Source of the DNA: Lytechinus pictus
Lineage: Eukaryota
NCBI RefSeq assembly: GCF_037042905.1
Contig: NC_087247.1
Coordinates: forward strand, 67,394,001-67,458,000
Direction: 5' to 3'
Length of the DNA: 64,000 nt
Position numbers and translations under genes: made by a program. Positions within the stretch are counted from its first letter, which is position 1. Each line of letters starts with the position of its first letter. Below, one piece after another: positions 7,348-64,000 of this stretch. The notes below the pieces were generated by a model. It was not told the DNA's origin. It did no database searches and saw nothing but the letters and a program-made list of their open reading frames with translations.

Positions 7348-7513
7348 NNNNNNNNNNNNNNNNNNNNNNNNNNNNNNNNNNNNNNNNNNNNNNNNNNNNN
7401 NNNNNNNNNNNNNNNNNNNNNNNNNNNNNNNNNNNNNNNNNNNNNNNNNNNNNNNNNNNNNNNNNNNNNNNNNNNNNNNNNNNNNNNNNNNNNNNNNNNN
7501 NNNNNNNNNNNNN
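7348..7513. other. Assembly gap (166 N) in AT-rich repeat
   Basis: Run of N. The sequence aaagtgctata(c/g)tgtacataata(t/c)attatgtaca occurs on both sides. Confidence 0.98.
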
Positions 7514-28851: not shown

Positions 28852-28926
28852 ATGTGGTATGGAAATAGTTGCTCAGAGATGGATCAATCAATGTGTATAT
28901 CATTGCAACAGCTTCCTACGATGTCT
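28852..28926 (+). CDS. Candidate alternative first coding exon (E-Alt-like), MWYGNSCSEMDQSMCISLQQLPTMS
   Basis: ATG-initiated 25-codon open frame ending at TCT|gtaagt in phase 0, compatible with the VYSP exon at 39833. Preceded by inverted CCAAT and TATAAA. Same intron as the vertebrate HEBAlt/E2-2Alt exons. Confidence 0.6.
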
Positions 28927-39832: not shown

Positions 39833-39920
39833 GTGTATTCTCCAGGTGCAGAAGACTATCATTCAGACCCTAATTATTCATCGCCTAAACCCCCTGGCAT
39901 GTATCCAGAATATTTCATGG
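39833..39920 (+). CDS. TCF12: E-protein coding exon VYSPGAEDYHSDPNYSSPKPPGMYPEYFM
   Basis: Acceptor ctctctttccaagcag, donor G|gtgagt; 88 nt, phase 0->1. Homologous to TCF4 [23 protein letters not shown]...FFMQ. Confidence 0.92.
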
Positions 39921-41428
39921 GTGAGTACCTTTAACCTTGAATATTATAACCATTTTATTTACATTTAATTTTATTTAAAATAAACATCAATTGTGTAATG
40001 ATGCAGTGCCTCAGCGTTTACAATGTGGTGCTCTCTTATCTTTTTTTTGCTAATTCATTTTTATGAGGAGTTATCTTAAATTGCACATTAAATATGAGAA
40101 AAGAAGAGAAGTTTGGGAGTGAAGTTTTCTCTGACTTTCCTTCTAAGAAGATGCCAATCAAAGCAAACTGTTTTGTAAAATGGAAGAGCATCCTACTATA
40201 AAATCCTGACATATTTGTTAAAGAGAGGAAGAACACACGCCATGAAGATAACAAACCAGCTCATCAAAATACATGTGATAATGATAAAGAAAGAGATGCA
40301 CTAACGGCATGAAAGTGATCTGCTCCTATGTGACAGAGCCGAAACAAAAACCAGCTCCCGGGACAGAGTCGAGGATCAAACGAGGCAGGTGTTTGGAAGA
40401 AATCACCCCGCGGGACAATTTATTCAGACCGGAGAACGAGCACGAAAATGACTACTTGTTGCTGGAGTGCTCGCCATGGGATGAAGTTTCCAATCGATGG
40501 AATTCAGTTCTTGATTTCAACCAATTTTCATGGAGAGAAGGAACTAGGGTAGGGGATGAAGAGGGATGAAGATGTTTAAACGGATGTGGAGTGGATTTTT
40601 ATTGGTTTGTGGGAATTTCTGAGTAATATTTTGATTGACAATGCTGTTAGGCATGAAGTATTATTGACGTATCATATCTCAGGGATTTTTTCTTTCTTTT
40701 CAAGGTCCCTTTTTTCAATCTGGAAAGTGATAATATAAATTTGAAAGTAAAATCGTCTAGGATAGATGATTTAAGACATCTTTTTCTCCAACAATATATT
40801 CCTTTCTTGTTTGATGGTGAATTATAATTGAATAGAGAGGGTATTACAGAAGTGACCTGGGTAAAAGCAGAATATTGTCAAAAGCGTTTTTCAAGCAGCC
40901 TTCTTAGTCAGTGGACCTTTACATTTGTTGATAGATGCAAGTATCTGGTAAATAGATTTTGTTTCCATGGTTATGTATAGTTGACAGATGGTAAGTTACT
41001 TGCCTGGTATGAGATACTGCTGCTGCACTGCCCTTTGAAAGTAACAAATTCAGGATTGAGGGGAATGGGATGTAGTCCTTAGGAACACCAAAACAAGGCT
41101 TTATTGTCTGGAAAGTACATCCATATTTCCATTCTTCTCTCAAGTGACATACAGAGATTTTCAGAAATTATGGAATACTTTTGTAATGAATTTTACAGAT
41201 TTCAACATTTTCTGATTTTAAGTGTAGAGAGGATATATCATAAAGTTTGGGTCCTGGAGAGCAATTAATTGTTTTAAGATTATATGCTTAGTGTTGGCTA
41301 TTTTTCTCTATATTTTTGATGGATTGAAGAGGTTTTTTTTTTGCTTGTGATATCTATGCAATATTCTGGGCAACCTTTAGTTATTTTTTAAATGCCCCTG
41401 TCTTTTTTTCTCTTTTTTGTTGTCCTAG

Positions 41429-41574
41429 AAGGTTCACACTCCCAGGGCCACTCTCACAGTAGTACAAATCCATGGAGCAGCAATGGCATGGCGCCAACGT
41501 CCAATAGCTTCCATTCCTTACATAACTCCAGTTCTTATTCTCAGGCAGGGGAATACCCTACACATGAACCTATG
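41429..41574 (+). CDS. TCF12: E-protein coding exon (E)GSHSQGHSHSSTNPWSSNGMAPTSNSFHSLHNSSSYSQAGEYPTHEPM
   Basis: Acceptor tttttgttgtcctag, donor ATG|gtgagt; 146 nt, phase 1->0. Homologous to TCF4 DGHHSSDPWSSSSGM...SSSY...HPHERL. Confidence 0.92.
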
Positions 41575-46483: not shown

Positions 46484-46566
46484 CAAGTAGTAGAGGGAAT
46501 GGCACAAATAACTCATCAGGTTCCAGCTCACATACAGGAGCTGCACTTGGCAAAGCTCTAGCATCT
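46484..46566 (+). CDS. TCF12: E-protein coding exon (S)SSRGNGTNNSSGSSSHTGAALGKALAS
   Basis: Acceptor tttgatttgacag, donor TCT|gtaagt; 83 nt, phase 1->0. Carries the diagnostic E-protein motif SQTGDALGKALAS, with the intron at the same position as in vertebrates (just before IYSPDH). Confidence 0.95.
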
Positions 46567-61260: not shown

Positions 61261-61844
61261 AGGAGAATGAAACCCTTGAAACCAGCTGAATGCATATCAA
61301 AGAGAAAAATCAAAGAAACATATTGTTGAAAGTTTGAGGAAGATTGAATTAATAAATAAAAAAGTTATGAGCATTTGAATATTGAGATCACTAGTGCCAT
61401 GTAGATCCTCCCATCGGCAATGCGACCAAGATCTGTGATATCACACACGTACAACTCCCTCATTAATTTAGTACTTATTTCACGTATATTCTCACTTTTA
61501 TAGAGTCTATCACAAGGTGAGGTGTTCTCTTTATGATATGACAAGTACAGAGGTTTCACAACATTATATCATTGATGAATCGTTTGTCATATGATTAGAA
61601 TGAGCAAAAATAAATGTTTTGGGGTATATTTTCAGTGTCCAAATGGGAGAGTTGTACGTGTGTGACATCACAGATCTTGGTCGCATTGCCAATGGGAGGA
61701 TCTCCATAGCATTAGTGATCTCGACATTCAAATGCTCATAACTCTTTTATTGCTAGTCCTATTTTACTCAAAGTTTTGTTGATCTTATTCTTTGATTTTT
61801 CTGCTTTCACAAAAGCTAACTTGCTCCAAGAGTTTCATTCTCCT
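61261..61844 (-). mobile_element. Kolobok-like MITE (copy 2, inverted relative to 32003-32584)
   Basis: TTAA|aggagaatgaaac ... gtttcattctcct|TTAA; close match to the reverse complement of copy 1. Confidence 0.93.
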
Positions 61845-63201
61845 TTAATTGATATGATGCATGTGTGATATTGAGATAGATTCTTGCTGCACACCCTGAA
61901 TTTGAAAACAACATGATTTTTTTTCAAAAGAAAAAGAATATAGTTACAACCCAGAATTTTCATGGAATGATATTTAAACAAAGTTTGCATTTGTAGACTA
62001 GGTTAGAAAAAAATGGAGAGGGGAGAGTGCTGTAGTGAACAGCTGAGCTATATCATTTCTCAGGCCATTACATAATCATGATATCCCCACCCTCTCTTCC
62101 TCTTTCTCCCTCCCTCTGATAACACACAGTCCTGTATCTTTTTCCAAGAAGCTCCTTGCTTTTTCCAATTCAGCAATAAATGCACATGGACACTTCTCCC
62201 ACTACACCATACTGTGTTGTGGTAGTGGTGCTATCCATTGAATTTATTTAACTTTTAAGCTGTTGTCCAGAAGATGTTCTAGTGAGTGGTAATAGCAGAG
62301 CTGGATTGCCCCATCTAATCTGGTGGTGGAAGTTTTTGGTAGCAGGCGCTAGTTTGGGCTTGCTGTGAGCGTGAGAGCAGGAGAAAGCGCTGGGAAACTG
62401 GAAGTGATGTGTAACTGGTGGAAGCATTTACTGCTGTGCGATGCGATAAGGTTGTAGACAGTGGATCAGAGAGCACATGGGCATAGTGAAGGGTGTCAGC
62501 GCTTCACTTCTTCTACAACTTTACAAGGTTCTTCTGGAATACCTGTGCTACCAATTTTAGTGGAATTTGGTTGGATATACAGCAAAGAGAAGTTAATAAA
62601 GTTTGATGGAGTTGTTCAGCTTGGATGTACATTTAGAGAACACCAGATGCACATGGTTGATAATGTAACATTTGCTTGGAGTTTGAGGTGTCTACCAACT
62701 TGCATGATCAGCATCTCATAACAATTAAATAACTTGGAGTTGGTGTGCTCTTCTTGGAATGGAGATTATCTGTGGATCAGCCTGATAAATTAAAAAAAGT
62801 GTATATTAGGAGCATCCCTTGAATTAGTAAAATGAAAATAATCTTTCAAAGTTGTAGGAATTTGCAGAAATTTGTTTTGTGAAGTTTGCTCAATTAGAAA
62901 TCTTCAATATTCTTATGTTGGACCCCATCAGAAATAAAGGTCGTATTCAAATCCAGTGAGACTGCAGTCACATCAAATTAACAAATTAAATTGATTGATA
63001 ATTTACTCTCCTTTAGCTCTTATTTTTTATGAAGAAAAGTGAGTTTAAAAAAAATTACAGTAAACTGAATTTGTGATTCTCTCTGCAAGCAAGTGCCCAA
63101 ACTCTTTCCTGATCCTGTAATTAATACAAAGGAGTAAATTTGGAGCAATTTGGGAATAAATATTTTGTTTTGATAGACAAACCATCTTGATTGAGATCAA
63201 G

Positions 63202-63333
63202 ATGTATAGTCAAGCAGCCCACACTATGCAGGCGGAGTCTGGCTACCCTGTACCGGTAGCTGTGACTGTAGCATCATATCATCAGCAGCCGTCCATGTTT
63301 ATACCCAACTATGCACATGCTAGATATCCATGG
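63202..63333 (+). CDS. Candidate alternative first coding exon, MYSQAAHTMQAESGYPVPVAVTVASYHQQPSMFIPNYAHARYPW
   Basis: aagATG start, 44 open codons more GC-rich than the flanks, donor TGG|gtaagc in phase 0, which fits the expected next (IYSPDH-type) exon beyond the window. Confidence 0.6.
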
Positions 63334-64000
63334 GTAAGCAACCTTCAACCCTCCCGCTGGCCACCCGCCGCCCAACCATGTCTGTTTGTCTGGTCTTGGT
63401 TCATAGCTTGCTAGAACTTATTATATCCATTCATCTTGAAATATTATCTATCATGTTTAATTGATGTTTGTCTTGTAAATGCAAGAGGAATCTCTAGATC
63501 TTTCCTACCATATTATTATGCTACCTGAAAAATGCATATTAATATCTTAAAAGTTTGGTATATCTTTGTTAACTCATGCAATGTTTAATTCCAAGTTCAA
63601 ATCTTGTGTTGCAGTTTTTATTGGGAGTAATATTTAATTCCAGCAAATAACTCCTTTTATATTTAATATGGCCATTTTATTAGTCTGCTTCCATAATTAT
63701 CTATAAGTCTTTTTACTTACTTTTACTTTATGTCCACAATGCTGTAGTGTTACATGAGTGCCTTATTTAAAATTTAATAATGAAGGCTTTCAATCATGTC
63801 TGTACAGATCAATCCTGATTCCAGGCATGTGAAAGTACAAATTTAAAGGCAGTTTTTTCCTATTTCAGGATTTCTACCAAAGAGGAAGGTCATCTTCCAT
63901 GGATAGGAAGGTTAGAAAGGTTATGCTAATTGACAGTGTGAAGAGGGGGTGGGTGGGGTTTGCATGGATCATGAAGATGGGAATAGGGGTGGGGGTAAAG

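What the first reader, a model, noticed from the sequence alone, without database searches (positions are those of the whole stretch)
63202..63339. Candidate second Alt-type first exon with an MY...YPVP motif, in an unexpected intron
Seen: an ATG-initiated 44-codon frame (MYSQAAHTMQAESGYPVPVAVTVASYHQQPSMFIPNYAHARYPW) ends at a strong phase-0 donor (TGG|gtaagc), 16.6 kb into the intron after the GKALAS exon, which is also phase 0. Known: the vertebrate HEBAlt Alt domain begins MYCAYPVPG and its exon splices to the VYAPS exon, four introns earlier. Inference: this exon could start a very short E-protein isoform lacking AD1, the bipartite NLS, LPPM and GKALAS motifs while keeping the downstream region and bHLH. 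The shared MY and YPVP may reflect homology (a relocated or duplicated Alt exon) or chance. The nearby acceptor ttttgttttgatag (63176) is out of frame from 46566 (ACA AAC CAT CTT GAT TGA), so it would suit a 5'UTR splice or a poison event rather than a coding cassette.
Basis: partly seen in the sequence, partly recalled or inferred. Interest (0 to 1): 0.8.

Follow-up and report, generated by a model that had tools for sequence, protein, structure and literature searches.

The report
Internal start exon in E-protein gene
Deep inside an invertebrate E-protein (TCF12/E2A-like) gene lies a transcribed extra 5' exon, spliced at the predicted donor, that would give a much shortened transcription factor; its likeness to the vertebrate "Alt" domain is no better than chance.

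Summary
ATG 63202, a 44-codon open frame and the phase-0 donor TGG|gtaagc at 63333/63334 are all there. They lie 16.6 kb into the intron between the GKALAS exon and the IYS exon of an E-protein gene.

RNA-like contigs from three public runs (two species) cover window ~62398/62430 to 63333 without a break. Each stops exactly at the donor and then carries exactly 30 foreign letters. That is the k-1 signature of a path merging into an exon shared with another transcript. So the donor is used, and the exon is at least 936 nt long. The acceptor-like AGs at 63176, 63195 and 63201 are not used. The unit therefore behaves as an alternative first exon, not a cassette.

The next canonical exon (IYS, 9.8 kb downstream, outside the window) has a phase-0 acceptor, so the frame runs on to AD2 and the bHLH.

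- **Coding status:** moderately supported. Codon usage matches the gene's exons (p about 0.015) and the sister species has no indels in the ORF. Against it, the leader carries 13 upstream ATGs.
- **Homology to the HEBAlt Alt domain:** not supported. There is no YYY motif, the peptide is 44 aa rather than 23 aa, the splice target differs, and the similarity is no better than shuffles (p=0.12).
- **Database matches:** none.

The scan also noted this stretch in an overlapping window (s1-320155). Verdict: a new variant of a known kind.

The parts
62300..62499 (+). GC- and CpG-rich block where the RNA contigs begin; putative internal promoter / start-site region (inferred, not mapped)
   Evidence: GC is 0.49-0.54 with 5 CpG here, against about 0.3-0.4 and 0-1 CpG in neighbouring 100-nt bins. 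Contigs start at window 62398 (X1), 62430 (X15) and 62428 (X5).
62398..63201 (+). 5' leader of the exon (minimum extent). It holds 13 upstream ATGs with short uORFs of 1-27 codons, the last ending at 63076.
   Evidence: Contigs are colinear with the genome over L001 799/831/829-1734. The leader's 31-mers are held by RNA-like runs of organism A (2 studies) and organism B (3 studies).
63163..63201 (+). Acceptor-like sites not used in the observed transcripts: ttttgttttgatag| ending at 63176 (out of frame from GKALAS), and AGs at 63194-95 and 63200-01 (in frame)
   Evidence: Sequence. Contigs of 3 runs pass through without a break or branch.
63202..63333 (+). 44-codon ATG-initiated ORF (A at -3), open to the donor in phase 0
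   Evidence: Codon-usage LLR is +14.2 bits in frame against -19.1 and -5.2 in the other frames, with 1.5% of the null windows reaching it. The sister-species contig has no indel here, whereas all its 37 gap letters lie in the leader.
63334..63339 (+). Splice donor gtaagc, used
   Evidence: Coverage of X1, X15 and X5 ends exactly at L001 1734 = window 63333. Each contig then carries 30 letters unlike the intron. Depth in the following intron is zero in X1 and X15.
46486..46566 (+). Canonical GKALAS exon (context). It ends in phase 0, the same phase as the new exon.

Best explanation
An internal promoter in the 26.6-kb intron between the GKALAS and IYS exons of the animal's E-protein gene drives a long alternative first exon (at least window 62398-63333). 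Its donor at 63333|63334 is spliced to an exon shared with the canonical mRNA. That exon is most probably the IYS exon 9,838 nt downstream (G000:C3:67467172-67467250), whose acceptor is phase 0. The mRNA encodes an N-terminally truncated E protein. It would begin with a unique 44-residue peptide if ATG 63202 is used, followed by the IYS/PSNPSTPVGSP region, AD2 (MEERLDDAINVLQKHA) and the bHLH. It lacks AD1, the KRRK nuclear-localisation exon, LPPM and GKALAS. By analogy with NLS-less, AD1-less TCF4-A/HEBAlt forms, it should dimerise and bind E-boxes, enter the nucleus with partner bHLH proteins, and activate more weakly. Shown here: the exon, its transcription in two species, donor use, phase compatibility and coding-like composition. 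Inferred: the identity of the downstream exon, the start site, translation and function.
For:: contigs X1 (966 nt, depth 9.7), X15 (934 nt, depth 16) and X5 (995 nt, depth 75, sister species) align to L001 799/831/829-1734. All end at 1734 (= window 63333) with exactly 30 unaligned letters. Thirty is k-1 for 31-mer graphs, which marks a merge into a shared exon. X1 and X15 have no cover of the flanking intron. X1 and X15 start without any foreign tail, so they look like tips rather than junctions; the leader is present in RNA-like runs of 2 studies (organism A) and 3 studies (organism B); the IYS exon acceptor is cag|ATT in phase 0, and GKALAS and the new exon both end in phase 0; the ORF has the codon usage and GC (0.49) of the gene's exons; 1.5% of null windows reach its score, and the other two frames score negative; none of the 10 indels between the species falls in the ORF; the downstream bHLH exon is of E2A/TCF4 type (PDB E=2e-29); the exon is single-copy, not a repeat. 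Function analogy: PMC3137626 (NLS-less TCF4 isoforms are imported by piggy-back, and all keep AD2); PMC3346973 and PMC9399370 (HEBAlt comes from a start inside the gene, lacks AD1 and has lower activity).
Against: The 30 letters after the donor were not printed, so the joined exon is inferred and not read. The runs are only guessed to be RNA. The leader has 13 uATGs, a density no lower than random expectation, which argues against efficient translation from 63202. A total-RNA run of the same species showed no read on the exon in the 6% sampled (X19). The organism B contig has 40 unaligned letters at its 5' end, so an upstream exon is not excluded. The peptide has no homologue in 5.8 billion or 1.84 billion proteins, or in JGI metagenome contigs. 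In the sister species the ORF is not clearly better conserved than the leader (word share 0.29 against 0.13, not significant).
Confidence: 0.62

Rival explanations
1. The transcript is real, but the 44-codon frame is not translated. The exon would then be a long uORF-laden 5'UTR or regulatory RNA from an intronic promoter or enhancer. Any protein would start at a downstream Met (for example in the AD2 exon, RMEERLDD), or the RNA would act only in cis.
For: There are 13 uATGs in at least 804 nt of leader, with no depletion against expectation. No protein homologue turned up anywhere. Conservation of the ORF against the leader in the sister species is not significantly different. The GC-rich block continues about 50 nt past the donor into the intron.
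Against: The frame is open for 44 codons to a donor in the right phase. The ATG has A at -3. The last uORF ends 126 nt upstream, which allows re-initiation. Codon usage is exon-like in this frame only. There are no indels in the ORF between the species.
Confidence: 0.25
2. The exon is a relocated or duplicated homologue of the vertebrate/sea-urchin Alt exon (true Alt-domain homology).
For: It is tyrosine-rich (5 Y) and first-exon-like.
Against: There is no YYY motif, which PMC9385190 treats as the functional core. The peptide is 44 aa against 23 aa (PMC3346973). It lies four introns downstream of the VYAPS-type exon that Alt joins. YPVP occurs by chance 3 more times in the six-frame translation of the 124 kb read here. 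A separate short ATG exon sits in the positionally homologous intron (28852-28926).
Confidence: 0.05
3. The 3' part is a cassette or poison exon of the canonical mRNA, spliced in through the AG at 63176 (which gives a stop) or the AGs at 63195/63201 (in frame: GKALAS-(IK)MYSQ...).
For: These AGs exist, and 63176 has a good pyrimidine tract. An exon of 132 or 138 nt would keep the frame.
Against: Contigs from three runs and two species run colinear through all three AGs with no break or branch, for 800 nt further upstream.
Confidence: 0.05
4. Artefact: genomic DNA or chimeric assembly in the public contigs, so there is no real exon.
For: The run type is only guessed ('RNA?').
Against: Three independent runs from three studies and two species share the same sharp end at a consensus GT donor, each with a 30-nt foreign tail. 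The neighbouring intron has no cover, and the run sizes (about 100-160 Mb of contigs) are far below the 812-Mb genome.
Confidence: 0.03

Closest known systems
HEBAlt / E2-2Alt (TCF12 and TCF4 'Alt' forms; TCF4-A)
   Same: Transcription starts inside the E-protein gene at a dedicated first exon that supplies a short unique N-terminus. The product lacks AD1 and keeps AD2 and the bHLH (PMC3346973, PMC9399370).
   Different: The Alt exon encodes 23 aa with a YYY motif and joins exon 9 (VYAPS). Here the peptide is 44 aa with no YY. The exon lies four introns further 3' and must join the IYS exon or a later one, so the product is far shorter. Sequence similarity is not above chance.
Multiple alternative 5' exons of human TCF4 (21 initial exons, 18 N-termini; Sepp et al. 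2011, PMC3137626)
   Same: Many internal promoters, each 5' exon spliced to the next internal exon. Short isoforms (A, H, I) lack AD1 and the NLS and reach the nucleus by piggy-back on partners.
   Different: In TCF4 the most 3' initial exons (10a-c) lie in front of exon 10. None is described downstream of the GKALAS-type exon. The present one would also remove the whole region between the NLS and GKALAS.
Sea urchin SpE-Alt (Schrankel et al. 2016, Dev Biol 416:149)
   Same: An invertebrate single-copy E-protein gene with a second, Alt-type start form (known to me only from the title and from memory).
   Different: This could not be compared. The paper is not held, and no text giving the exon's place or sequence was found.

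Membership tests
Alt domain of HEBAlt/E2-2Alt | Encoded by a dedicated exon at its own start site inside the E-protein gene | tested here: inconclusive
   Contigs are colinear for at least 804 nt upstream of the ATG, and X1 and X15 show no upstream junction. The start site is not mapped, and X5 has a 40-letter unaligned 5' tail.
Alt domain of HEBAlt/E2-2Alt | 23-residue domain (PMC3346973) | tested here: not met
   44 residues.
Alt domain of HEBAlt/E2-2Alt | Triple-tyrosine YYY motif in the last third (PMC9385190) | tested here: not met
   The five tyrosines are all isolated, with no YY.
Alt domain of HEBAlt/E2-2Alt | Exon splices to exon 9, the VYAPS exon (PMC3346973) | tested here: not met
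   The VYSPG exon is at 39833, which is 23 kb upstream of the candidate. The next exon downstream is IYS.
Alt domain of HEBAlt/E2-2Alt | Sequence similarity above chance | tested here: not met
   Local score 25 against shuffles 19.7 +/- 4.0, p=0.12. The Alt sequence came from memory, so the test is approximate.
Alternative 5' exon of an E-protein (class I bHLH) gene | Lies within an E-protein gene on the coding strand | tested here: met
   GKALAS, IYS, AD2 and bHLH exons lie on the + strand around it. The bHLH exon hits Pfam HLH (4e-12) and PDB E2A/TCF4 (2e-29).
Alternative 5' exon of an E-protein (class I bHLH) gene | Transcribed, and its donor is spliced | tested here: met
   Three runs and two species end at 63333 with foreign tails, and the intron beyond is not covered.
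Alternative 5' exon of an E-protein (class I bHLH) gene | Joined to the next internal exon in frame | tested here: inconclusive
   The phases match (0/0), and the 30-letter tail indicates a shared exon. The tail letters were not shown.
Alternative 5' exon of an E-protein (class I bHLH) gene | Protein isoform exists | not testable with these tools
   No proteomic or ribosome data. Codon-usage support only.

The most novel reading that the evidence does not exclude
The single invertebrate E-protein gene has a third, ultra-short form, made of a translated lineage-specific 44-residue N-terminus plus AD2 plus bHLH. It is driven by a promoter further 3' than any described in TCF4, TCF12 or TCF3, and it acts as a partner-dependent, weakly activating modulator of E-protein dosage in particular tissues.
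Probability: 0.35. Interest if true: 0.55.

Novelty: new variant of a known kind. Interest (0 to 1): 0.42.

Why it matters
E proteins are the obligate partners of tissue-specific bHLH factors. In vertebrates, alternative promoters tune their activity (HEBAlt in early T cells, many TCF4 isoforms in brain). A further internal promoter in an invertebrate single-copy gene would yield a form stripped to AD2 plus bHLH. That would show that multiplying promoters is a recurrent way of regulating this family, and it would give a natural minimal E protein to test. It also corrects an attractive but unsupported homology claim: the likeness to the Alt domain is chance-level.

Tried and rejected
1. **Canonical-exon idea.** My first idea was that MYS... 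is the canonical exon after GKALAS (compare vertebrate GKALAS|IYSPDH), spliced through the in-frame AG at 63195 or 63201. I rejected it. The true IYS exon lies at extended coordinate 73172, and the contigs run through those AGs.
2. **Protein searches.** The 44-aa peptide, the 84-aa open frame and the 1.84-billion representative library all gave no hit.
3. **Contig recovery.** I tried to recover the RNA contig through an ORF in the leader with the look-up of encoding contigs. It is not on record.
4. **JGI metagenome contigs.** No relative was found.
5. **AD2-exon search.** This found only two genomic ORF calls of relatives (87% and 79% identical) in ENA assemblies.
6. **Duplication test.** I tested whether the peptide is a diverged copy of the VYSPG, IYS, AWQQ, WSSNG, LPPM or GKALAS exons. 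None scored above shuffles.
7. **Other scans.** Pfam, Rfam and the repeat scan found nothing. Own-genome searches show the exon is single-copy.
8. **Literature.** The Schrankel 2016 paper is not held. Citing papers give no exon detail.

Full report
**Observation.** The window is G000:C3:67394001-67458000, + strand. At 63202 an ATG (context atcaagATGt, A at -3) opens 44 codons: MYSQAAHTMQAESGYPVPVAVTVASYHQQPSMFIPNYAHARYPW. They end at TGG|gtaagc, 63333|63334. The GKALAS exon ends GCA TCT|gtaagt at 46566 in phase 0, 16,636 nt upstream.

**Gene context.** I read 60 kb beyond the window and placed these + strand exons:

| Exon | Position | Boundary notes |
|---|---|---|
| KRRKAPGMS (NLS) | ends 21976 | phase 0 |
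| VYSPGAEDYHSDPNYSSPKPPGMYPEYFM | 39833 | phase-0 acceptor |
| WSSNG | 41428-41574 | |
| LPPM | 45747 | |
| GKALAS | 46486-46566 | ends phase 0 |
| IYSADHPNSTYPSNPSTPVGSPPPHSG | extended 73172-73250 | acceptor cag\|ATT, phase 0 |
| AWQQ | 80231-80301 | |
| AD2 (QTRMEERLDDAINVLQKHA...) | 86259-86468 | |
| bHLH | 106256-106489 | |

- The bHLH exon hits Pfam HLH (4e-12) and PDB E2A/TCF4 chains (2e-29). The gene is therefore an E-protein gene.
- The candidate lies in the 26.6-kb GKALAS-to-IYS intron, four introns after the intron that corresponds to the HEBAlt intron.
That overturned my first idea that MYS... was itself the canonical exon after GKALAS.

**RNA evidence (the one read-laying run; L001 x = window x + 61599).**
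- Contigs of three runs match the stretch: X1 (organism A, 966 nt, depth 9.7), X15 (organism A, another study, 934 nt, depth 16) and X5 (organism B, a close relative, 995 nt, depth 75).
- They align colinear to L001 799-1734, 831-1734 and 829-1734.
- All three alignments end at 1734, which is window 63333, the last exon base. Each record then has exactly 30 letters that do not fit the intron.
- The bin depths agree with cover stopping at 1734. X1 and X15 have zero depth over the next 1.2 kb of intron and over the 450 nt upstream of the contigs.
- The runs are only guessed to be RNA. But a sharp stop at a consensus GT with a foreign tail, no intron cover, and about 100-160 Mb of contigs for an 812-Mb genome are the behaviour of transcripts.
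- On the minus strand the boundary would read AC, not AG, so the transcript is on the + strand.
- Thirty letters is k-1 for 31-mer graphs. A contig stops 30 letters past a junction when its path merges into sequence also reached from another upstream context. The downstream exon is thus shared with a second transcript in the same samples, as expected if the donor joins an exon also used by the canonical mRNA.
- The next such exon is IYS, and the phases fit (0/0).
- I could not see the 30 letters. This step is inference.

**First exon or cassette?**
- The contigs pass through 63176, 63195 and 63201 without a break and continue at least 800 nt upstream.
- X1 and X15 begin (62398, 62430) without a foreign tail, as tips do. 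They begin in the only GC- and CpG-rich block of the neighbourhood (62300-62499: GC 0.49-0.54, 5 CpG).
- The leader's words are held by RNA-like runs of two studies in organism A and three in organism B.
- This fits an internal promoter and a first exon of at least 936 nt.
- Open points: X5 has 40 unaligned letters at its 5' end. No start site is mapped. A total-RNA run (X19) gave no read on the exon in the 6% of it that was read.

**Is the frame coding?**

For:
- The frame is open 44 codons to a donor of the right phase.
- Codon-usage log-likelihood was trained on 402 codons of the gene's other exons against local introns. It is +14.2 bits in frame and -19.1 and -5.2 in the other frames.
- Only 1.5% of stop-free intronic 44-codon windows reach that score, and no window of the leader exceeds -1.9.
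- GC is 0.49, like the exons (0.43-0.58).
- All 10 indels (37 letters) between the two species lie in the leader, and none in the ORF. About 1.9 would be expected, P(0) about 0.15.

Against:
- The leader has 13 uATGs (about 17 expected at random), so there is no sign of selection for scanning. All of these uORFs end by 63076, which leaves room for re-initiation.
- The ORF's 31-mer share in organism B (2 of 7) is not significantly above the leader's (0.13).
- The GC-rich block runs about 50 nt into the intron.
- I put translation of the peptide at roughly even odds. The truncated reading frame downstream does not depend on it.

**Homology to Alt.**
- PMC3346973 defines the Alt exon as encoding 23 aa, with its own start just upstream and a splice to exon 9. 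PMC9385190 shows that a YYY motif in its last third is the functional core.
- The candidate has 44 aa and no YY, and it lies downstream of the VYAPS-type exon.
- Local alignment to the remembered HEBAlt sequence rests on YPVP alone. It scores 25 against 19.7 +/- 4.0 for shuffles (p=0.12).
- YPVP occurs three more times in six-frame translation of the 124 kb read here.
- Alignments to the gene's own S/P/Y-rich exons are also at chance level, so an origin by exon duplication is not supported either.
- No homologue exists in the protein collections, JGI metagenome contigs or Pfam.
- The exon is single-copy in the genome.

**Mechanism proposed.**
- An internal promoter yields an mRNA whose protein keeps the IYS region, AD2 and the bHLH. 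It lacks AD1, the NLS exon and everything up to GKALAS.
- In human TCF4, isoforms without the NLS are carried into the nucleus by partner bHLH proteins, and isoforms without AD1 activate less. All studied isoforms keep AD2 (PMC3137626).
- HEBAlt behaves as a hypomorph (PMC9399370).
- The new form should behave likewise, only more so.
- In TCF4 the most 3' initial exons lie in front of exon 10. A start behind the GKALAS-type exon is not described there.
- The sea-urchin SpE-Alt paper is not held, so that comparison is open.

**Verdict.** The 'extra start exon giving a very short E protein' reading is largely supported by transcript contigs from two species. The 'Alt-type / MY...YPVP homology' reading is not supported. 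This is a new variant of a known kind and is moderately interesting.

Noticed in passing
window 28852-28926: In the intron that corresponds by position to the HEBAlt intron (between the KRRKAPGMS and VYSPG exons) lies a 25-codon ATG frame, MWYGNSCSEMDQSMCISLQQLPTMS. It ends at a strong phase-0 donor TCT|gtaagt and, like the canonical upstream exon (...PGMS), ends in MS. It could be the positional Alt homologue. I had no RNA check left, and it shows no significant similarity to the candidate (p=0.13).
   Followed up: partly
window 61600-61941 (L001 1-342): A high-copy repeat. Summed contig depth is about 10^5 in RNA-like runs, and about 1,400x in raw total-RNA reads on both strands. Many internal joints and strand switches make it look like a SINE or MITE family that is abundantly transcribed. 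It lies about 450 nt upstream of the new exon's first covered base.
   Followed up: no
window 63634-64366 (L001 2035-2767): Organism B's run X5 has low-depth (about 5.7) colinear contigs in the intron just after the new exon, against depth 75 on the exon. This may be pre-mRNA or another weak transcript. Organism A's runs show nothing there.
   Followed up: no
window 64906-65000 (L001 3307-3401): Total-RNA reads of X19 pile up here with the first mate on the - strand. All of them carry the same two differences (A>T, T>G at L001 3370-71), so they probably come from another copy of a repeat.
   Followed up: no
P0001, P0002 (ENA metagenome assemblies): Two ORF calls in ENA 'metagenome' assemblies are genomic read-throughs of the E-protein AD2 exon of related animals (87% and 79% identical). 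Host or eukaryote contigs of relatives therefore sit in those assemblies. The DNA was not retrievable.
   Followed up: partly
window 7348-7513: Run of 166 N (a gap or masked stretch), left untouched.
   Followed up: no
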